A DNA stretch of 42,964 bases from Octopus bimaculoides (GCF_001194135.2 NC_068998.1:10535924-10578887), one strand, 5' to 3'. Shown: positions 1 to 10,946, counted from the first letter of the stretch. The notes: a model not told the origin generated them from the sequence alone. Numbers and translations are program-made.

Positions 1-101
1 TCTCTCTCTCTCTCTCTCTGCATATCTTTTACGTCATACGAATTGTCAATCAAATGCAGATGTGAACTTTCCGCCATTGTTCCTCATTCGGCATGACGTA
101 G

Positions 102-185
<84 letters not shown>

Positions 186-346
186 GTGAAATATCTCAAT
201 AAAACTCATTTATAAGATGCAAGTGCATACATACGTACATACATATATACATACACACAAATACACATGTATGTATTATATACATTATCAAGATCTCATA
301 CGGGTAACTACTCATGATGCAATTGACAATAATTTTGCATTAATTA

Positions 347-396
<50 letters not shown>

Positions 397-645
397 TACA
401 CACACTAACACACGCACACGTACACACACATACAAACCATTTGCACGCACATACACGCACATACATACTCATGTATACTTACACACAAATGTGCATGCAT
501 ACGTTTGTGACAAGTGTACTCAAGGAAAAAGAAACGATGATGACGATGGAGACGATGATGAGGAAGGTGATAATGATGAAGATGATGATGATGATGACGA
601 TGATGATGGCGGTGGTGGTGAAGAGGAGTAGGAGTAGTAGTTGGA

Positions 646-720
646 GGAGGAAGGAGAGTAGGAGGAAGGAGAGTAGGAGGAAGGAGAGTAGGAGGAAGGA
701 GAGTAGGAGGAAGGAGAGTA
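646..720. repeat. 15-bp minisatellite (GGAGGAAGGAGAGTA)x5 within degenerate GAT/GGA microsatellites
   Basis: Five perfect units read directly. Confidence 0.95.
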
Positions 721-799
721 GGAGGAAGAAGAAAAAGAAGAGGTGGAGGAAGGGGAAGTAGTGGAGGAACAGGAGGAGGTGGTGGAGGACAACGACGAC

Positions 800-1724
800 N
801 NNNNNNNNNNNNNNNNNNNNNNNNNNNNNNNNNNNNNNNNNNNNNNNNNNNNNNNNNNNNNNNNNNNNNNNNNNNNNNNNNNNNNNNNNNNNNNNNNNNN
901 NNNNNNNNNNNNNNNNNNNNNNNNNNNNNNNNNNNNNNNNNNNNNNNNNNNNNNNNNNNNNNNNNNNNNNNNNNNNNNNNNNNNNNNNNNNNNNNNNNNN
1001 NNNNNNNNNNNNNNNNNNNNNNNNNNNNNNNNNNNNNNNNNNNNNNNNNNNNNNNNNNNNNNNNNNNNNNNNNNNNNNNNNNNNNNNNNNNNNNNNNNNN
1101 NNNNNNNNNNNNNNNNNNNNNNNNNNNNNNNNNNNNNNNNNNNNNNNNNNNNNNNNNNNNNNNNNNNNNNNNNNNNNNNNNNNNNNNNNNNNNNNNNNNN
1201 NNNNNNNNNNNNNNNNNNNNNNNNNNNNNNNNNNNNNNNNNNNNNNNNNNNNNNNNNNNNNNNNNNNNNNNNNNNNNNNNNNNNNNNNNNNNNNNNNNNN
1301 NNNNNNNNNNNNNNNNNNNNNNNNNNNNNNNNNNNNNNNNNNNNNNNNNNNNNNNNNNNNNNNNNNNNNNNNNNNNNNNNNNNNNNNNNNNNNNNNNNNN
1401 NNNNNNNNNNNNNNNNNNNNNNNNNNNNNNNNNNNNNNNNNNNNNNNNNNNNNNNNNNNNNNNNNNNNNNNNNNNNNNNNNNNNNNNNNNNNNNNNNNNN
1501 NNNNNNNNNNNNNNNNNNNNNNNNNNNNNNNNNNNNNNNNNNNNNNNNNNNNNNNNNNNNNNNNNNNNNNNNNNNNNNNNNNNNNNNNNNNNNNNNNNNN
1601 NNNNNNNNNNNNNNNNNNNNNNNNNNNNNNNNNNNNNNNNNNNNNNNNNNNNNNNNNNNNNNNNNNNNNNNNNNNNNNNNNNNNNNNNNNNNNNNNNNNN
1701 NNNNNNNNNNNNNNNNNNNNNNNN
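800..1724. other. Assembly gap (925 N) hiding the precursor C-terminus. Other gaps: 10478-10924, 14110-14400, 29614-29699, 31583-31906, 32856-33334, 35736-35745
   Basis: Runs of n; most are bordered by microsatellites. Confidence 1.
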
Positions 1725-1859
1725 GTCTGTGTTCCTTGCTGTCTTCGTCACTATTCAGGCCAGTAAGAGGCACCTCCTTATCTGGTTTGGGGTCGGATTT
1801 TTTCACTCTGGGCGAGTTCTGTTGGTTGCCAAACATCAACACCTCTTTGGCTCTTTTCT
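1725..1859 (-). CDS. GNXQN: Neuropeptide precursor (GNXQN/GNQQNxP family), second coding exon containing the mature peptide; 3' end lost in the N gap
   Basis: Acceptor tgtttctttgcag|AG in phase 1, matching the donor at 10155/10154 (G+AG = Glu). The frame is open to the gap: (E)KRAKEVLMFGNQQNSPRVKKSDPKPDKEVPLTGLNSDEDSKEHR. The FGNQQNSP motif lies between KR and KK dibasic sites and matches the annelid/mollusc GNXQN family as I recall it. Confidence 0.85.
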
Positions 1860-1871
1860 CTGCAAAGAAAC

Positions 1872-1951
<80 letters not shown>

Positions 1952-1984
1952 GTCGTTATTAACGGCGGAAACAGTGTCATTTCA

Positions 1985-2118
1985 AAAGAGACCGATGGAA
2001 TAAATACTAGGCTTAGCAAAGAATAAGTCCTGGAGTCGATTTCTGCGACTAAAAATCCTTTAAGACGGTACTCCAGCATGGGCGCAGTCAAATGACTGAA
2101 ACAAGTAACAAAATAACA
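1985..2118 (+). mobile_element. CORE-type SINE, 3' tail fragment
   Basis: ...aataaatactaggcttagcaaagaataagtcctggagtcgatt...ctccagcatgggcgcagtcaaatgactgaaacaagt matches the tail of the full-length copies. Confidence 0.75.
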
Positions 2119-3054
2119 ACAGAATATTGTAGAAATCCACACAACTGTGGTATTCGCCTCGAGAAAGTATCTCGTATCGACGTCTAGTGTTAAAAAGCAC
2201 GGAGGAATATCAGTTGCCTCTGGCGGACGATTTTCTTCTGTTATATAGGTATTGCCCAAGGTCGAACATTCCTGACGAAGTCTCTCCACAATTATGCGAT
2301 TGTTCTGTCATAGTTTGTTTTACGGTTGCTAATATGGGGTCGCAACTCTTCCTGTAAGCCTGCAGTTTCCTGCATACTAGAGCTTGTGTGCCTGTCAAAA
2401 CAGATGCCAATAGACCAATCTGTCGTTGTTTGCCAAGTTAAACTCCTGTATATCCGTAGGAGATATACAGGTTTATGAAGGTTGACTTCCTTTCGTCATA
2501 TTCCTGATAGGGGTGGCTAAACGGGTACTATGCCTGGCCAAAGGGCAACCCATATCTATTCAAAACACGATCGTCTGCTACTGTGTGGCGTTCTACAGTA
2601 TATCTGCGTTAAGTAAATTATACGGAATGCTATTTCGAAATATAAAATCGGTTTATAAAATAGAAAATTGTAATTACGTCAGACGACTGACATTAATAAT
2701 TTGAAACACTTTCATCATATCTCAACATAACAAGAACAAAAACTACAACAAAAATGCTTATATTCCATGCCTGTATGCGCATAGAACAACTATTATGTCA
2801 TGCTGTGTTTAAATTTGTTTCTCTCCAAACCTGTTAGGCTTCTAGGTAGAAACTGATCATGTATAAATTGAGTTCACTTTCGAATCTCTTTTATACGGGA
2901 TATATATATATACTTAGCTTTAAAAGCACATAAATGTATTCTGCTGCATTGAGTTTATGATTTAATAATGCAGTGTGTCGTACTATATTTAATATAAATT
3001 TAGTCTTGCAGAGTGAGCGAAACTTTTCAATATATCCATAGGCTTAACCAAACA

Positions 3055-3412
3055 AACGTAGATAATAGACAGCAGGTTTCTAATAGGTTAGCTTTCATCA
3101 GTTCTTAATTTCTGCAATCCCGCAGAGAGATCGCACTTAGCAGTTGTGGCATAGTACACAACTCTAGTGTACAGGCTAGTAGGCTAGTTTACATAACAGT
3201 GTTACTTTGACAACTTATAAAAGCACTCTTTAAAAAAATTCTCTAGCCAAGCAAGCGTATCTAACAGGACAGCGGATTTCTAGCAGGTTAACCACATCAG
3301 TTCTTTTGAACTCCGCAGTTTTGTTAAAAGATCGCAGCAAACAACTGCAATATAGAACACGATTTTATTGTACAAATGGGTAAGCTAAATTTGACAACTG
3401 ATAAAAATTCTG
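3055..3412. repeat. Old ~200-bp tandem duplication
   Basis: gacagcaggtttctaataggttag...catcagttctt...agatcgca...tttgacaacttataaaa versus gacagcggatttctagcaggttaa...catcagttctt...agatcgca...tttgacaactgataaaa. Confidence 0.7.
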
Positions 3413-3480
3413 TTTTTACACATACATTTCAGCAAGGCAATTGAAAAAAAAAAAAGAAAATTCGGTAACACCGAGATATA

Positions 3481-3566
3481 GGCGCAGGAGTGGCTGTGTG
3501 GTAAGTAGCTTGCTTACAAACCACATGGTTCTGGGTTCAGTCCCACTCTGTCAGTTCGCTACCTTG
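3481..3566 (+). mobile_element. CORE-type SINE, tRNA-like head only
   Basis: ggcgcaggagtggctgtgtggtaagtagcttgcttacaaaccacatggttctgggttcagtccc, containing A and B boxes. Confidence 0.75.
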
Positions 3567-3794
3567 AAATCAATAAATGTAACCAGGAAATGTAATACAT
3601 GGATAATCCCAGAGCCCAGTATTCGATACTTGGCAAAACTAATAACGATATTGGCTTCTTACATAGGCATCATGATGTAAAGAGCTGTAATTAAATACCG
3701 CAAGGTATTCTGTCCGATTCTTTAGTGCCAGTATTTAATTGCTAATTGTTTTATTGAGACCAGAAGATAATGACTATCTCAATAGAATTTGGAT

Positions 3795-4640
3795 GAAAAT
3801 CTTAAGGGGACAAAGTCATCGTTTCGTTCGATGTTCCATCGATTTTTATTCTCTACGACCTTGTTTGGCAAAAATAAGGAAAAATTATTAATAATGGTTT
3901 CTAATTTGGAAATTTTGGTAGGAGGGAACAGTCAATTATATCATTCTCAGTTCTTGACAGGTAATTTATTTTATCGAATCTGAAAGGGTAAATAGCAATG
4001 TCGATCGTAATGGAATTCGAACACAGAACATTTAGGGTCATAACTAAATATGATAAAGCATTTTGCCTAACTCTCTGACGATTCTGCTAACCAAACGCTT
4101 TTTAAAAATAATAATTTCTAACACAGGCACAAAGATTTGGGGGTAAAGGCAAGTCGATTAAATTGACTCTGAAAGAATGCAAGGCAAAGTTGACTTCGGT
4201 GGGATTTGAGTTCAGAATGTATCAACCCCAGTACTTGACTGGTGCTTTATTTTATCGACCACAAACTAATGGAAGGCAAAATTGATCTCGGCAATATTTG
4301 AGGTCAGAACAGATCTACTCGTAGAGCTTCACTGCTTCTTTATTTACTTTATTTTATCGACCACGAAAGAATGAAAGAGGAAGTTGATTTCGACAGGATT
4401 TGACCCCAGGAAATAACGAACTCAAATCTTGATCAGTACTTTATATCATCAATCCTAAATGGATGAAAGACAAAGTCGACATTGAAAGGATTTAATCTAA
4501 GAAAGCATCGAACTTAGTACTGGATTGGTGCTTTATTTTATCGACCAAAGCAACAAAAGAAAAATAGGAAAAAGATGGAAGACGAAGTTGACCTCAAGAG
4601 GATTTGAACTCAGAACGTAAGAAGTCGAAATAAATACCTT
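3795..4640 (-). repeat. Head-to-tail stack of about 7 degenerate internal Meta-SINE segments
   Basis: The unit ttattttatcgacc...aa(t/g)gaaaggcaaagt(c/t)gac...ggatttga(a)ctcagaac recurs at ~3800, 3966, 4150, 4245, 4349, 4440 and 4534. Confidence 0.65.
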
Positions 4641-5551
4641 GCGGTATTTATTGCTTCCGACGTTCTAACAATTAAACCAATTTACAACTTTCGATCCATC
4701 GGAATAACCATAACCGAACTATGGCATTTGCCTTCAAATGTCAACAGCGATCGACCTCGGATAATATTTAAACCAAAGTCACCGTTGTTAAATCACTCCA
4801 CCAAAGAGCAAGGTTAATTAAAACACTCTAACCGGATAACGATCTCCACAGAAATTTAGGATGACCGAAGCAGATTTTAATTAATAATGGATTACATTAA
4901 TACACCAGATGAATCGTGATAACATTGCTTTTTCACAGCTAAAAGAGACACAACAAGTATAGCTGTAATACAATTAACCAGTAACCAAACTTTCATGTAA
5001 AAACCCGAACGAATTTCATTAAGCACACTCCCTTATTCTTTTATTTATCGAAAGGTCTTTGAAGTGCGGCCATGTTATGGAATTGCTTTTCAAGAGTTTT
5101 AGTGGTTTTAGTGGTTTTATAACGATTCTAGGAGTTTGCATGGTACATATTTAATCGACATCAGGGTGGGGAAAAGGCTGAAAGGAGAAAATATTGAACG
5201 AACGTAAAGGGACGTAACCAAGATGGGTCAAATTAATGTAGAGCATTTTCTTTTGACCACGACTTTGTGAACCCATGCCTATAGACATACACATTTGGAG
5301 AAAAGTATGGCTGGACTTCGGTTCTTGGTGGGGGACGAAGCAGACCTTTAGTTCATACACTACAAAATATCGCGACGTCTGGATTAATAAAAATCTGCAA
5401 GACCTTTTTAAGATTTAAATGATGATGAAGAAAACAAGATGCTTTCTTTTACAATCTTGCTACGAAACAGGTGGCCGGTCAAAATTTAATCCATATTACA
5501 AAGAGAAAGAGAATACACATACATACATACATACATACATACATACATACA

Positions 5552-5599
<48 letters not shown>

Positions 5600-5602
<3 letters not shown>

Positions 5603-6135
5603 CTAGACGTGATCCTAGACCTGAAAACAAGCCAGCACTACCCTTACAAGAAGGCCAGCGTGGCGACTGTAGACATTCATAGAAGTTCGAATCACCTCAC
5701 CCTTGCTATAATTAGAAACCTAGTCCCAGGCGTTACCAGAAGAATATTCAAGCTTTCGCTGATAAGGATGTCATCAATAGGGCCGCCCTCCACTACAATG
5801 ATGCTTTGGAGAGGAGTGGGTTTACTGAGAAGTTAAAATATATGGAGGACTCTTAACCCCCAACCCCGCACTTGATGAAGACTAGAAAGAGGAAGATAAT
5901 CTAGTTCAATGCTCCATATAGCTTAGAAGTTTGCACCAACGTGGCGAGGAGCTTCCTGTCATTGATTAAGAAGCATATCCCCAGGGGCTACGAGTACTAC
6001 AAGCTCTTCAACCTATATAACATCAAGGCGAGGTACTCTTGCTTAGATAACATCACTTCTAATATTGCACGCTACGACAGACACAAAAAAGCATGCGCAC
6101 AACCGCCAGCCTCAATCTGTAACTGTCGAAGCCCT
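5600..6135 (+). pseudogene. Penelope-like retroelement fragment (Naiad-type RT C-terminus/thumb, linker and start of the Cys motif), decayed
   Basis: FLDVILDLKTSQHYPYKK...SSNHLTLAIIRNL...RRIFKLS, then a frameshift, then DKDVINRAALHYNDALERSGF...RKRKII*FNAPYS..TNVARSFLSLIKKH...KLFN..NIKARYSC..NI...CNCRS. This resembles PLE RT/linker motifs (RKRxIIWFNPP; CNCR). There are two in-frame stops and one frameshift. It is cut by a SINE at ~6137. Confidence 0.8.
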
Positions 6136-6136
6136 A

Positions 6137-6262
6137 CCGGTGTTCGTGTGTTTACGTACTCGTCATTTAGTGGTTCGGCAAAAGAGACCGACAGACTAAG
6201 TACCAGGTTTAAAAAGGAAATAAGTACTAGGGTCGGTTAATTTGATTAAAATTCTTCAGGTG
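6137..6262 (+). mobile_element. CORE-type SINE 3' half, directly after the Penelope-like fragment
   Basis: ccggtgttcgtgtgtttacgt...ggttcggcaaaagagaccgacagactaagtaccagg matches the 3' half of the 24680-25085 copy. Confidence 0.7.
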
Positions 6263-6862
6263 TCATTAGCGTCAATAACAATTCTTTTAAAGGAAACTAA
6301 GGAAGAGAAGACTGAGACTGAAAGTGGCTAAAAATTAAATAGCGATACATAGTGGGTGGGGCAATGTGATTTTTGGTTGGTACAATGATAAATCCATATA
6401 TATTTCAATCTTATTAGGCCTTCTCAGCCAGAGATTGTATTTATTACACATTCTCATCAGGTCTTAAAATGTGTGTGAGGATAAAAAAAATTTGTGCAAG
6501 AATTTATTCAATGAAATGTGGTTTTAGTTGATATATTATGTTTGATTGGTAGCTTTCGTTTTTGCAGAAATATTAATAGCTTTAAGATGAAAACCATGCT
6601 GCCACCACCACCACCACCACCAGCAACAACAACAACAACGACGACGACAACAACAACAACAGCAGCACGCAACAACAGTAGCAAAACAACATCAACAACA
6701 ATAACTACAACATCCGGATTCTCTTGTCGACTAATCCAAAGCTTTGAATGTTCTTCAAACTCATTTCGTCTGCTTCTTCCAATCCCTGTCTTGTTCTATT
6801 GATTCAGTTAGATGCCAAATAAATAAAAAAACGAAATAAAATAATAATAATAATAATAATAA

Positions 6863-6930
<68 letters not shown>

Positions 6931-7659
6931 ACAACAACAAATATTATTATTATGATTATTACTATTATTATTGTTGTTGTTGTTATTATTATTGTTATCA
7001 TTATTATTATTGTTATGAAAAGTGATAGGAAACACGAAATCACAGAAACGATAACAGCTGCAATAATATTTGCAACAGCCTACATCAGCATCGCTACTAC
7101 GAGTGCAACAGCAACAGCCAAATCAACAAAAGTAGAATAAAGACATCCTCAACAGCAGCAGCAGCAGCAGCAAAAAGTAAAAATGGCAAAGAAAAATAAA
7201 AAACAAAACGAGGCAAAAACAAATGCAAGAACAAAGCAACATCTATAATAATTTCAACTATTGCAATGACTACAAATTCAAGTGAAACAATAATAACAAC
7301 ATTTGCAACAATAGCACAAAATAGCAACGAGTCAATGAGGCAATCTTTATACCGGTTGCCAGGTTTGCAAGAAGATGAGAGGACCACAAATGGAACCACA
7401 GTCGAAGGATCGAAATTCTTACTCAATCATAAAGAATAACAAGCTGGCATGGGAACCTCAACAAAATGAGTCGACTTGCTAAAAATGGCAGCCTAACCTC
7501 TGTCTCAAATAACACTCAATAGTCTAAAATAACCATCCTCGACAGTTTTTGCACTACGAACTGCTATCATGCAACACAAGTTTCTCCCATAGACCGGGGG
7601 ATCACGCGTATAACAAAACACAATAAACTGCATAATCTATAATTCAACTATTACATATA

Positions 7660-7878
7660 GACGTGGCTGAGTGGTAAGAAGCCTCTTTGCCAACCACATA
7701 GTTCCGGGTTCAAAGCCACTGCTCATTGCGTGACAATTTGGGCAAGTGTCTTCTACTATAGCCTCGGACCAACCAAAGCCTTGTGAGTGGATTTGGTAGA
7801 CGGAAACTGAAAGAAGCCTGTTGTGTTTCTGTGTGTCGTTGTGTGTTTTTGTGTTTGTGTTTATATATATATATGTAT

Positions 7879-7956
<78 letters not shown>

Positions 7957-8270
7957 ATGCGTATCTATGTGAGTATGTTTGTGTTCATGTTTGTCTCCAA
8001 CATCGCTTGACAACTGTTGTTGGTTTACTTACGTTCCTGTAACTTAGCAGTTCAAGAAAGCGACCAATAAAATAAGTGCCAGGCTTAAAGAAACAACAAT
8101 AAATATTGGAGTCAAGTCGTTTAATTAAACCAGTACAAGGCCGTGCCACAGCATTTCAGTGACGCAGCATGACAGTGCCACAGCATGGCAGTGCCATAGT
8201 ATGGCGATGCCGTACCATGGTGGCGCTCAAGCATGGCTGCAGTCCAATGACTGAAATAAATGAAAGGTAA
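7660..8270 (+). mobile_element. tRNA-derived CORE-type SINE (OR2-like), full length
   Basis: A box (tggctgagtggtaag), B box (gggttcaaagcc), CORE-like tttgggcaagtgtcttctactatagcc, central (TA)n(TG)n and tail ...cagcatggctgcagtccaatgactgaaa. Homologous copies occur throughout the window. The family name is from memory. Confidence 0.8.
8143..8238. repeat. 16-bp degenerate minisatellite x6 inside a SINE tail
   Basis: gtgccacagcatttca/gtgacgcagcatgaca/gtgccacagcatggca/gtgccatagtatggcg/atgccgtaccatggtg/gcgctcaagcatggct. Confidence 0.85.
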
Positions 8271-9157
8271 TATCATAGGAGATAAAGAATCGATTCGCTG
8301 CAAATATCTTTGGGAATTATCATCCACACCACGCTATGTTTTCTAATTTCAGGATAAAACTAGATACTGCATCGCAAATTAGTTTCCTCAAACAGATAAA
8401 ATGTATCGATTTTGAGTTTTTTTTCCCCCTATCAATTTATAAAGAAAATTAGATCTTTTATTTTTTCTTTATCAGAGTGTGGCATTTATCTAATCTTTTG
8501 AAGGATAGTGTTGATGGCCTTCTTTATTTCCTCTTGATTGGCAAGATTAGACATAAATCTTCATGTTAGTAGTTAGCCGGAAAGAAAATGGTATGTTTTT
8601 GTAGTTCAGACAGACGTCCTTATCAGGAAAATGAGTTAACGAAAGTATTAGTTTGTCTTTGTTTTGACATAGATTAGTGAAGGTCGAGTAAGACCTGTGA
8701 TTTAAGTAATTTCAGCATTGGCCATACTGTTTCGTTATTTATTTATTTATTTAGGCATAGGTGCAGGCATGGGTCTGTAGTTTACGAATTCCACTTTGTA
8801 ACCACACGTTTTGGGGTTCGGATCTTCTGCGTAGCATTTTGAGTGTCTTCTGCAATTAAAGCCTTGAGCTGATTATTGCCATATGAGTGAATATGACAGA
8901 CGGAGGCGCTGTGAAAATACATATACATACGTACAAACACATCCACACGCACTCACACACATATTTATATGCATATGTGTGTGCGTGCGCGCACACGTGT
9001 GATTAGTGGTTAAGGTTTGCAGCCATAGTCGTAATATTGTTTCCCTTCCTGGATCGGGCTATGCGTGTGTTCTTCAGTAAGTTCTCATTGTCCCGGTCCA
9101 CGCAGCTGGCAAAAATGAGTAACCCTTCGACGTCACAAAAACCGAGAAAATGGCCTT

Positions 9158-9990
9158 GTGCGGTGAATAAATTGTCGTCTAAATTACGCAAAAATGAAAA
9201 TAACACTGACATCTCATTTTATGATATATTTACCAAAATTACATAAAAATATCTGGAAATGCTAAAGAGCCAATTTATTCAATAAAATCGCCATTGCCTT
9301 CAACCACGGCCTCCAGACAACTTCGGAACCTCCCGCAACTCTTCTGGACAGTCTCCTTGTTTAAGTTGGTGAATACTGCCATGATTCTTGCCTCCAGTTC
9401 ATCTTTGGTGTTACAAGGAGTTTTGTTGGTCTCTCGCTCAACTGCGTTCCATACATAATAACCAAGCGGGGTGCAGTCTGAGGAGTTAAGTGGTCAGATG
9501 TTAGGAGAGATGTGGTCACAGAAATTATCTGACAGCCATGATTGAATTCTCCTGCTTGTGTGGCATGGTGCAAAGTCCTGTTGCCAGACACAGGGTCTTC
9601 CAGCATCCACCCTCTTGATCCAGGGCAGCACTATCTCCTCCAGGCACTTGATGTAGGCCTCCGGGTTGAGTCTGAGGCCGTGTGGGAAGATGAATAGAGG
9701 CATAACTTCGCCGTCACTAGTGATCCCTTCGAACACCATGATGCTGGTTGGATGTTTGCTTTTTATCACTTTCGGTACATGTTCGTATTGGAGCTTCCGG
9801 TGCGAATGCCAAGAAGTACAGCATGTCGTTTCCAAATTTCTGGCAGAGTGAATTGCGTCATGGTGCTATTTTTCTCACAGACGGTGCCCATCATAGAATG
9901 CCTATTATATTGACAAAATCAAAAACAAAGAATACGCTTGCGCAAAATTAAATATATAAAATGGCGACAACTTACTCATCGCACCCTTTA
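9158..9990 (-). mobile_element. Tc1/mariner maT (DD37D) DNA transposon, internally deleted and non-autonomous
   Basis: Imperfect TIRs at 9158-9177 (gtgcggtgaataaattgtcg) and 9965-9984 (cgacaacttactcatcgcac). Transposase C-terminus ...VWQQDFAPCH...NSSDCTPLGYYVW...EAVVEGNGDFIE* has 37 residues between the second D and the third catalytic position, which is G here. The N-terminus MTQFTLPEIWKRHAVLLGIR (ATG 9861) is fused out of frame near 9780. Confidence 0.85.
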
Positions 9991-10154
9991 TGTATGTATG
10001 TATATATATACATCGTACTAAACTTGGAAAAAACAATAAAACCTATTGGTGGCTAAGCTGGTCAAATGAAACCCTGCAAGGAGGTGCTCCAGCATGACCG
10101 CAGTCCAATAACTGAAATATGTAGAATAATATGTAGAATAATAAATAGCGTTAC

Positions 10155-10290
10155 CTGCGTGGCTGTTTCTGTCAGTATTGAGTGGCATTGCCTTCTCATC
10201 GCCGTCTTTCTTTTTTCTCATTTCCATGGGATGACTGCAACATACCATCACTACCAGCGAGATTATCGCGAGACTTATTAGCAGTCTCAT
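10155..10290 (-). CDS. GNXQN: Neuropeptide precursor (GNXQN/GNQQNxP family), first coding exon: signal peptide plus N-terminal propeptide
   Basis: The ATG at 10290 has A at -3 (aaccaaccATG). It encodes MRLLISLAIISLVVMVCCS|HPMEMRKKKDGDEKAMPLNTDRNSHA+G: basic n-region, hydrophobic h-region, small residues before HP. The exon ends at a strong phase-1 donor GCAG|gtaacg. An upstream acceptor, (CT)n-ccaatcag|, puts the exon start at 10335 with 45 nt of 5'UTR. Confidence 0.85.
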
Positions 10291-10342
10291 GGTTGGTTCT
10301 TATTTCAATTGCTCGTGTAAACGTTGTTTCTATGCCTGATTG

Positions 10343-10389
<47 letters not shown>

Positions 10390-10946
10390 AAAGGAGAGAT
10401 TTTAATATAAACGCAAATAATGAAGGTAAGATTTATGCAGACATTACAAGTTTCTTTCATTGCACGCGCCCCGTTTANNNNNNNNNNNNNNNNNNNNNNN
10501 NNNNNNNNNNNNNNNNNNNNNNNNNNNNNNNNNNNNNNNNNNNNNNNNNNNNNNNNNNNNNNNNNNNNNNNNNNNNNNNNNNNNNNNNNNNNNNNNNNNN
10601 NNNNNNNNNNNNNNNNNNNNNNNNNNNNNNNNNNNNNNNNNNNNNNNNNNNNNNNNNNNNNNNNNNNNNNNNNNNNNNNNNNNNNNNNNNNNNNNNNNNN
10701 NNNNNNNNNNNNNNNNNNNNNNNNNNNNNNNNNNNNNNNNNNNNNNNNNNNNNNNNNNNNNNNNNNNNNNNNNNNNNNNNNNNNNNNNNNNNNNNNNNNN
10801 NNNNNNNNNNNNNNNNNNNNNNNNNNNNNNNNNNNNNNNNNNNNNNNNNNNNNNNNNNNNNNNNNNNNNNNNNNNNNNNNNNNNNNNNNNNNNNNNNNNN
10901 NNNNNNNNNNNNNNNNNNNNNNNNAGATTGATTGATAGATAGATAT

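What the first reader, a model, noticed from the sequence alone, without database searches (positions are those of the whole stretch)
1725..10335. Split GNXQN/GNQQNxP neuropeptide precursor gene, invisible in the ORF track
Seen: a signal-peptide exon ends in GCAG|gtaacg and an exon 8.3 kb away starts at tttgcag|AG. Both are phase 1, and joining them gives ...NSHAE-KR-AKEVLMFGNQQNSPRV-KK-SDP.... Established (from memory): GNXQN/GNQQNxP is a lophotrochozoan proneuropeptide family found in annelid and bivalve surveys; to my knowledge it has no deorphanised receptor or demonstrated function. Inference: this is the octopus orthologue and an orphan cephalopod signalling system. The track hides its two halves inside ORFs 10018-10290 and 520-2289.
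Basis: partly seen in the sequence, partly recalled or inferred. Interest (0 to 1): 0.85.

Follow-up and report, generated by a model that had tools for sequence, protein, structure and literature searches.

The report
Octopus GNXQN neuropeptide precursor, 5' half
The two exons are real and splice into the start of a known mollusc and annelid neuropeptide precursor (GNXQN/GNQQNxP, also called prohormone-2). The gene model is already in public databases and the family has already been reported in cephalopods, so this is a correct but ordinary annotation.

Summary
On the minus strand, ATG 10290 opens a 136-nt signal-peptide exon ending GCAG|gtaacg at 10155. An 8,295-nt GT-AG intron follows. Exon 2 starts at 1859 after tttgcag. 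Both junctions are phase 1, and the join reads ...NSHAE-KR-AKEVLMFGNQQNSPRV-KK-SDP...

It is not chance:
- A profile of 45 non-octopus family peptides hits only this exon in the six-frame window (E=1.7e-14).
- The oyster peptide AQEVMMFGNQQNKPRI, seen by mass spectrometry, is 12/16 identical.
- The phase-1 intron in the codon before KR is also present in Patella and Pecten.
- An uninterrupted contig from a relative (most simply a transcript) reads straight through the join.

It is not new:
- The exact 90-aa spliced product is already a public protein record.
- A 506-aa Octopus sinensis protein, misnamed "LEO1-like", is 96% identical and carries the family's acidic middle and conserved C-terminus.
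- De Oliveira et al. 2019 already placed GNXQN/prohormone-2 in every mollusc class except Scaphopoda.

The window holds only the first 90 codons. Exon 2 runs into a 925-N assembly gap, and the C-terminal domain is absent from the window.

I found no paper reporting a receptor, so the family's orphan status stands. That is a property of the family, not a discovery made here.

The parts
10155..10290 (-). Exon 1, coding part. ATG at 10290, 136 nt, ends in phase 1 at the donor CAG|GTAACG. Encodes MRLLISLAIISLVVMVCCSHPMEMRKKKDGDEKAMPLNTDRNSHA plus the first base of Glu46.
   Evidence: sequence. O. sinensis orthologue residues 1-45 map to 10290..10156 at 95.6% identity; identical public gene model.
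10234..10290 (-). Predicted signal peptide, residues 1-19 (MR, then a 16-residue hydrophobic core, then Ser). Probable cleavage is CCS|HPM.
   Evidence: Kyte-Doolittle 9-residue means of 2.1-3.2 over residues 1-17, dropping below -2 afterwards. S-H-P aligns with the S-A-P that follows the signal peptide in homologues (Pro21 is invariant in A1 and nearly invariant in A2). SignalP was not available, so this is a heuristic call.
10300..10302 (-). In-frame TAA four codons upstream of the ATG. ATG 10290 is therefore the first possible start in this exon.
   Evidence: sequence read directly.
1860..10154 (-). Intron 1, 8,295 nt, GT...AG, phase 1, fully sequenced. Contains microsatellites and a transposase remnant.
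   Evidence: the same phase-1 intron lies in the codon immediately before KR in Patella vulgata (L001) and Pecten maximus (L002); an intron-free contig from a relative reads through the join.
1725..1859 (-). Visible part of exon 2 (135 nt). Encodes the last two bases of Glu46, then KRAKEVLMFGNQQNSPRVKKSDPKPDKEVPLTGLNSDEDSKEHR. It is cut off by the assembly gap, not by a stop codon or a splice site.
   Evidence: O. sinensis residues 45-90 map to 1863..1726 at 95.7% identity. The orthologue continues ...KEHR-LTGDPDDDGS... for 416 more residues.
1852..1857 (-). Lys47-Arg48, the dibasic prohormone-convertase site at the N-terminal side of the peptide.
   Evidence: K47 and R48 are invariant or nearly invariant across the family alignments.
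1804..1851 (-). Predicted mature peptide AKEVLMFGNQQNSPRV. It has 16 residues, is not amidated, and has a calculated monoisotopic mass of 1816.925.
   Evidence: oyster AQEVMMFGNQQNKPRI, same length and 12/16 identical, was detected by MS; scallop SEEGIGFGNQQNLPK was detected by MS; family HMM consensus KRAkEtImFGNQQNeprvvKKsDp; masses.
1798..1803 (-). Lys65-Lys66, the dibasic site at the C-terminal side of the peptide. It is followed by SDP (1789-1797), the start of the next predicted peptide.
   Evidence: K65 is invariant in both alignments and K66 in A3; the oyster peptides SDPEVPALPDL(R), which begin at the equivalent SDP, were detected by MS.
800..1724 (.). Assembly gap of 925 Ns that hides the continuation of exon 2 (the acidic spacer and possibly more).
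   Evidence: gap list. (orthologue sequence after KEHR); no match to the family C-terminal domain anywhere in the window.

Best explanation
This is the 5' end (exon 1, intron 1 and the start of exon 2) of the octopus orthologue of the GNXQN / GNQQNxP / prohormone-2 proneuropeptide gene.

Inferred mechanism: the 19-residue signal peptide takes the roughly 500-residue, very acidic precursor into the secretory pathway. Prohormone convertases cut at KR47-48 and KK65-66, and perhaps at RKKK25-28. A carboxypeptidase trims the basic residues. This releases a 16-residue non-amidated peptide, AKEVLMFGNQQNSPRV, together with flanking peptides (DGDEKAMPLNTDRNSHAE and SDPKPDKEV...). The peptides are stored in dense-core vesicles and released from neurons to act on a receptor that has not been identified.

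Shown here: the exons, the splice junction, family membership of the N-terminal part, and the existence of a full-length orthologue. Shown by others in bivalves and annelids: that the equivalent peptides are produced (by MS) and that the gene is expressed in neurons. Inferred only: processing, neuronal expression and signalling function in octopus.
For: 1. Sequence and splice sites.
2. The identical 90-aa product is already a public protein record.
3. An exhaustive profile search finds a 73-member family. Its named members are gastropods, bivalves, the annelid Capitella and the brachiopod Lingula.
4. A family-peptide HMM built without the octopus sequence hits only exon 2 (E=1.7e-14). tblastn with the scallop precursor gives E=1.3e-5.
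5. Equivalent peptides with the same boundaries were detected by MS in oyster (AQEVMMFGNQQNKPRI and SDPEVPALPDL; PMC8398477 supplement) and scallop (PMC5996578 supplement).
6. The phase-1 intron in the codon before KR is conserved in Patella and Pecten.
7. An uninterrupted 1,548-nt contig, most simply a transcript, encodes ...TSHLEKRAKEVLMFGNQQNSPRIKKSDP... in a relative that shares 51% identity with the O. sinensis C-terminal half.
8. The O. sinensis 506-aa orthologue is 96% identical over the 90 residues, with an identical mature peptide. It carries the acidic spacer (pI 4.2, 27% D+E), the RRRR and R.KR basic clusters, and the C-terminal FFPYSEEP.SH...RLLELARALA domain.
9. GNQQNxP is a general neuronal marker in oyster and polyclad larvae (bioRxiv 10.1101/2023.01.04.522730).
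Against: About 82% of the coding sequence is not visible in the window. It lies in the 800-1724 gap or beyond the window start, so I cannot show that this copy is intact. I have no expression, junction-read or peptidomic data for octopus. SignalP could not be run. No receptor or bioactivity is known for any family member, so 'signalling peptide' is an inference from precursor architecture and MS detection. The species was not verified; 'octopus' rests on 96% identity to an O. sinensis protein.
Confidence: 0.8

Rival explanations
1. Same gene, different role. The product works mainly as a granin-like acidic secretory-granule protein (a cargo-sorting or processing helper, like 7B2 or the secretogranins) rather than as the precursor of a receptor-activating ligand. 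On this view the conserved GNQQN stretch is a sorting or processing determinant, or a by-product.
For: The full-length orthologue is long and very acidic (pI 4.2, 27% D+E) with scattered dibasic sites. In larval single-cell atlases the gene behaves as a general neuronal marker co-listed with 7B2, not as a marker of a few peptidergic cells. No receptor has been reported more than a decade after the family was described. Two separate regions, the N-terminal peptide and the C-terminal domain, are conserved.
Against: The 16-mer is by far the most conserved element and is bracketed by nearly invariant dibasic sites, which is the usual signature of a bioactive peptide. It accumulates as a discrete processed peptide in oyster. 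Granins have no defining sequence family to test against, and nothing was tested here.
Confidence: 0.15
2. The locus in this genome is a truncated or decayed copy (a pseudogene or partial duplicate) of the GNXQN gene, and only the first two exon pieces survive.
For: Only 90 codons are visible. The sequence after the gap (799..1, minus strand) is low-complexity with no acidic or family-like reading frame on the gene's strand. The C-terminal domain is absent from the window.
Against: Both exon pieces are open and 96% identical at protein level to O. sinensis, with an identical mature peptide and canonical splice sites. The break coincides exactly with an assembly gap. The gene runs towards the window edge, so absence of the rest is expected.
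Confidence: 0.04
3. The two ORF pieces are chance reading frames in repeat-rich non-coding DNA.
For: The window is AT-rich, full of microsatellites and contains many spurious ORFs.
Against: The motif occurs 0 times in 300 shuffles. The HMM gives E=1.7e-14. The intron position is conserved. Orthologues exist in other species.
Confidence: 0.01

Closest known systems
Octopus sinensis RefSeq protein 'RNA polymerase-associated protein LEO1-like isoform X2' (P0099, 506 aa)
   Same: It is 96% identical over all 90 visible residues, with 4 substitutions (S6T, L12V, E46V, P69T) and an identical mature peptide AKEVLMFGNQQNSPRV. This is clearly the orthologous gene.
   Different: It is full length: acidic spacer, RRRR and R.KR clusters, and the C-terminal FFPYSEEP.SH...LARALA domain, none of which is visible in the window. 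Its automatic name is wrong, driven by the acidic low-complexity region. Its genomic locus could not be retrieved.
Crassostrea gigas Cragi-GNQQN precursor (Realis-Doyelle et al. 2021, PMC8398477)
   Same: It has KR, a 16-mer AQEVMMFGNQQNKPRI (12/16 identical, same length), KK, then SDP.... The peptides were confirmed by MS, so the predicted octopus cleavage pattern has a direct experimental precedent.
   Different: The spacer between signal peptide and KR differs, being 27 residues with an extra RKKK site in octopus. The oyster transcript is mainly larval. There are no octopus expression data.
Mizuhopecten (Patinopecten) yessoensis GNQQNxP precursor (Zhang et al. 2018, PMC5996578; P0002)
   Same: Same architecture. 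It is 65% identical over KR...SDP, its peptide was seen by MS, and the related scallop Pecten maximus has the same phase-1 intron before KR.
   Different: The scallop peptide starts SEEGIG rather than AKEVLM. In Pecten the rest of the precursor lies in one exon, whereas Patella has at least one further intron. The octopus structure downstream is unknown. The scallop gene is eye-enriched.
Annelid GNXQN proneuropeptides (Platynereis, Conzelmann et al. 2013, PMC3890597; Capitella P0063)
   Same: KR-AEEIMYGNHQNSARM-KK-SGP in Capitella aligns with the octopus peptide, and Capitella shares the C-terminal domain with the octopus orthologue.
   Different: GNHQN rather than GNQQN. Identity outside the two conserved blocks is low.
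Insect prohormone-2 (NVPIYQEPRF-containing precursor; linked to GNXQN by De Oliveira et al. 2019, PMC6425005)
   Same: It is reported to share a GN[QHR]QN-type region near the N-terminus and to cluster with mollusc GNXQN precursors.
   Different: According to PMC8398477, cleavage sites are not conserved and homology is limited. I did not test this relationship.

Membership tests
GNXQN / GNQQNxP / prohormone-2 proneuropeptides | N-terminal signal peptide | tested here: met
   MR followed by a 16-residue hydrophobic core, with small residues at positions -1 and -3 (C-C-S|HP). Hydropathy profile. It aligns with the signal peptides of homologues. This is a heuristic test; SignalP was not available.
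GNXQN / GNQQNxP / prohormone-2 proneuropeptides | A single GN[QHR]QN motif near the N-terminus, inside a peptide of about 16 residues bracketed by KR upstream and KK (or KR) downstream | tested here: met
   KR-AKEVLMFGNQQNSPRV-KK. The HMM built from 45 other members gives 49.7 bits, E=1.7e-14. K47, R48, E51, G56, N57, Q59, N60 and K65 are invariant or nearly invariant.
GNXQN / GNQQNxP / prohormone-2 proneuropeptides | The next peptide starts with SDP (S-[DG]-P) directly after the dibasic site | tested here: met
   KK-SDPKPDKEV. S67, D68 and P69 are nearly invariant. Oyster SDPEVPALPDL was seen by MS.
GNXQN / GNQQNxP / prohormone-2 proneuropeptides | Phase-1 intron in the codon immediately before the KR site | tested here: met
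   Octopus G|AG (Glu), Patella G|CC (Ala) and Pecten G|TG (Val), each followed by K-R. This feature is my own observation on three species, not a published criterion.
GNXQN / GNQQNxP / prohormone-2 proneuropeptides | Long acidic spacer followed by the basic clusters RRRR and KR..R.KR[DE]L | tested here: inconclusive
   Not visible, because exon 2 enters the 800-1724 gap after residue 90. It is present in the 96%-identical O. sinensis orthologue.
GNXQN / GNQQNxP / prohormone-2 proneuropeptides | Conserved C-terminal domain [FY]F[FY]P[FY]S.EP.[TS]H...(AFVPEKR)...Y..L..LA.AL | tested here: inconclusive
   Absent from the window: C-terminal HMM best E=1.5, and tblastn with the scallop and O. sinensis proteins finds only low-complexity hits. 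The gene runs off into the gap and the window edge. The domain is present in O. sinensis as VFFPYSEEPRSHYSGLVGNKR...YSRLLELARALAV.
GNXQN / GNQQNxP / prohormone-2 proneuropeptides | The processed peptide is detectable by mass spectrometry and the gene is expressed in neurons | not testable with these tools
   Shown for oyster, scallop and Platynereis and in oyster and polyclad larvae.
Granins (chromogranin/secretogranin-like acidic secretory proteins), considered for 'works like' only | Acidic, heat-stable, Ca2+-binding dense-core-vesicle protein with multiple dibasic sites. There is no shared sequence signature across the class. | not tested
   Only composition was examined, on the O. sinensis orthologue (pI 4.2, 27% D+E). 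No membership claim is made.

The most novel reading that the evidence does not exclude
The GNXQN/prohormone-2 product may be a pan-neuronal, granin-like secretory protein conserved across protostomes. Its conserved N-terminal 16-mer and C-terminal domain might then serve the regulated secretory pathway rather than a classical ligand-receptor pair, which would explain why no receptor has been found. Alternatively, the perfectly conserved octopus peptide AKEVLMFGNQQNSPRV could be the handle that finally deorphanises the family in an animal with a large brain. Nothing in the window itself favours either reading; they rest on the family's architecture and published larval expression.
Probability: 0.15. 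Interest if true: 0.5.

Novelty: already known. Interest (0 to 1): 0.2.

Why it matters
It matters little beyond correct annotation. The family is an orphan in every animal studied, and the octopus peptide sequence is now explicit, so it could be synthesised for receptor screens or used for in situ probes. All of this could already be taken from the public O. sinensis protein and the 2019 mollusc survey.

One practical point: automatic pipelines misname family members because of their acidic spacer (LEO1-like, CWC22 homolog, IWS1 homolog, ARID4B). Cephalopod neuropeptide catalogues built from RefSeq names would therefore miss this gene.

Tried and rejected
- The word-indexed search with the 90-aa product found only itself. 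The scallop precursor, taken from a paper supplement, was needed to seed the family.
- Pfam has no model for the family or for the intronic ORFs.
- The look-up of encoding contigs had no record for P0001 or P0099. I therefore could not compare the O. sinensis gene structure or learn what lies in the gap.
- The stored copies of the De Oliveira 2019 sequence data sets are truncated and hold no GNXQN entries. I could not confirm that this exact octopus sequence is in their catalogue. The 'already known' label rests on their text, the public 90-aa record and the O. sinensis RefSeq protein.
- Post-gap sequence 1-799: I asked whether it carries the acidic spacer. On the gene's strand it reads S/P/L/H-rich low complexity. 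The D/E-rich reading is on the opposite strand and has stop codons. I rejected it as coding evidence; a misoriented contig cannot be excluded.
- The unnamed Logan contig L003 (P0071) shows no DNA similarity to the window, so it gave no information about the organism.
- Bacterial, phage and plasmid collections and the RNA tools were not used, because they are irrelevant to a eukaryotic protein-coding gene.


Full report
**What is in the sequence**

On the minus strand an ATG at 10290 opens a 136-nt coding exon. An in-frame TAA lies four codons upstream, at 10302-10300. The exon ends ...CACGCAG|GTAACG at 10155.

An intron of 8,295 nt follows (10154..1860). It contains no assembly gaps and ends in an (ATT)27 microsatellite followed by GTTTCTTTGCAG. 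Exon 2 begins at 1859. Both junctions are phase 1.

The spliced product reads MRLLISLAIISLVVMVCCS|HPMEMRKKKDGDEKAMPLNTDRNSHAE-KR-AKEVLMFGNQQNSPRV-KK-SDPKPDKEVPLTGLNSDEDSKEHR. All coordinates in the finding are correct, including the two bacterial-style ORFs that hide the halves.

At 1724 it runs into a 925-N assembly gap (800-1724). ORF 520-2289 is an artefact of reading through those Ns.

**Is it more than chance?**

Yes, on several independent tests.
- A regex for the full motif occurs once in the six-frame translation and never in 300 shuffles.
- tblastn with the scallop GNQQNxP precursor, taken from the PMC5996578 supplement, hits only 1857..1789 (E=1.3e-5).
- A 30-position HMM built from 45 family members, without the octopus sequence, hits only this ORF (49.7 bits, E=1.7e-14; next best E=0.73). 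Its consensus, KRAkEtImFGNQQNeprvvKKsDp, is almost the octopus sequence.

**The family**

An exhaustive profile search of 1.84 billion representative proteins returned 73 members at E<=1e-3.

The members I could name are:
- Gastropods: Patella, Lottia, Haliotis, Gigantopelta, Babylonia, Arion.
- Bivalves: Mizuhopecten, Pecten, Ylistrum, Tegillarca, Solemya, Pinctada, Mytilus, Mya.
- The annelid Capitella and the brachiopod Lingula.

All share four features:
- a signal peptide;
- one KR-...[FY]GN[QH]QN...-KK-SDP block;
- a long acidic spacer with RRRR and R.KR[DE]L clusters;
- a C-terminal [FY]F[FY]P[FY]S.EP.TH...LA.AL domain.

This is the GNXQN (Conzelmann 2013, PMC3890597) / GNQQNxP (Zhang 2018, PMC5996578) / Cragi-GNQQN (Realis-Doyelle 2021, PMC8398477) family. 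De Oliveira et al. 2019 (PMC6425005) linked it to insect prohormone-2.

**Support for the splice junction and the processing**

Three lines of evidence support the junction.
- In Patella vulgata (L001) and Pecten maximus (L002) a phase-1 intron interrupts the codon immediately before KR, exactly as in the window: G|CC-AAA-CGT, G|TG-AAA-AGA and G|AG-AAA-AGA.
- A 1,548-nt contig from a public sequencing run (L004) encodes P0098, a 416-aa relative, as one uninterrupted ORF reading ...HTDRTSHLEKRAKEVLMFGNQQNSPRIKKSDP.... It is most simply a transcript, and it shows the same join at the mRNA level.
- The exact 90-aa spliced product already exists as a public protein record, UniParc UPI00069569FC. 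An earlier annotation pipeline therefore chose the same junction and was cut off by the same gap.

For processing, oyster mass spectrometry detected AQEVMMFGNQQNKPRI. It has the same length and is 12/16 identical; my calculated mass of 1889.924 matches the reported value. Oyster MS also detected SDPEVPALPDL(R), and scallop MS detected SEEGIGFGNQQNLPK. These give a direct precedent for cleavage at KR47-48 and KK65-66.

**The rest of the gene**

A profile search with names returned a 506-aa Octopus sinensis RefSeq protein, misnamed 'RNA polymerase-associated protein LEO1-like isoform X2'.
- It is 96% identical over all 90 residues, with four substitutions and an identical mature peptide.
- After ...KEHR it continues LTGDPDDDGS..., through a very acidic spacer (proprotein pI 4.2, 27% D+E).
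- It then has YIYRRRRELQDRSPRTKRGL, and ends with PAKRVFFPYSEEPRSHYSGLVGNKR...YSRLLELARALAV, the family's C-terminal domain.

None of that is in the window. A C-terminal HMM and tblastn with two full-length proteins find only low-complexity matches. About 82% of the coding sequence therefore lies in the gap or beyond the window start. The integrity of this particular copy cannot be shown from the window.

**How it most likely works**

The mechanism is inferred from precursor architecture and from the bivalve and annelid data. The signal peptide directs the precursor into the ER. Prohormone convertases and a carboxypeptidase then release the non-amidated 16-mer AKEVLMFGNQQNSPRV and its flanking peptides into dense-core vesicles for neuronal release.

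No receptor or bioactivity is reported in the searchable literature. Published expression data:
- a general neuronal marker in oyster trochophores and polyclad larvae, listed alongside 7B2;
- eye-enriched in scallop;
- mostly larval in oyster.

The pan-neuronal pattern, the extreme acidity and the two separately conserved blocks leave room for a granin-like role in the secretory pathway. I give that about 15%. A pseudogene gets about 4% and chance about 1% or less.

**Comparison with what is known, and novelty**

However, De Oliveira et al. 2019 used the O. bimaculoides proteome and an O. vulgaris transcriptome among their data. They state that GNXQN extends to all mollusc classes except Scaphopoda, and that it is protostome-wide through prohormone-2.

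Together with the public 90-aa model and the full-length O. sinensis protein, this makes the gene already known. The stored supplements are truncated, so I could not verify that this exact sequence is listed in their catalogue. If it is not, the label would soften to 'new member of a known kind'.

'Invisible in the ORF track' is a property of the tool, not of the biology.

**Verdict**

This is a correct, well-supported annotation of the 5' fifth of a known orphan proneuropeptide gene. It is ordinary. I score interest at 0.2.

Noticed in passing
window 9494-9835 (-), inside intron 1: A 113-aa ORF (…FEGITSDGEVMPLFIFPHGLRLNPEAY…WQQDFAPCHTSRR…) looks like the catalytic-domain remnant of a Tc1/mariner-type transposase. 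It gives a weak match to Sleeping Beauty SB100X (E=0.0025) and no Pfam hit at E<=0.1.
   Followed up: partly
window 1872-1951: A perfect (AAT)27 microsatellite, (ATT)n on the gene strand, sits 11 nt upstream of the exon 2 acceptor, directly abutting the polypyrimidine tract. Length variation there could affect splicing. Not examined.
   Followed up: no
window 520-799, just beyond the gap: Low-complexity block: a 15-mer tandem repeat (AGGAGGAAGGAGAGT, about 6 copies, 645-732) and (GAT)n at 536-608. Read on the plus strand it is D/E-rich, and by composition only it resembles the acidic spacer of the O. sinensis orthologue. It lies on the opposite strand to the gene and contains stop codons. It could be unrelated repeat DNA or a misoriented small contig.
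   Followed up: partly
window 10346-10399 and 10478-10924: A (GA/CT)n repeat lies about 55 nt upstream of the ATG, followed by a 447-N gap. The promoter and any upstream non-coding exon cannot be read.
   Followed up: no
family members P0099, P0016, P0054, P0091 (not in the window): Automatic annotation misnames GNXQN precursors because of their acidic low-complexity spacer: 'LEO1-like' (O. sinensis), 'CWC22 homolog' (Patella), 'IWS1 homolog' (Lingula) and 'ARID4B' (Mytilus edulis).
   Followed up: yes
whole window: Seven assembly gaps totalling 2,562 Ns (6%), about 59% A+T, and dense di- and tri-nucleotide microsatellites that generate most of the long 'ORFs' in the ORF list. This is typical of a draft short-read cephalopod assembly.
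   Followed up: no
L004 (ERR1712168 contig, 1,548 nt): This contig carries a complete 416-aa GNXQN precursor. It is 74% identical to the N-terminal part of the window product over 56% of it, and 51% identical to the O. sinensis C-terminal half. It comes from an unidentified organism, presumably another cephalopod. The source organism of the run could not be looked up.
   Followed up: partly
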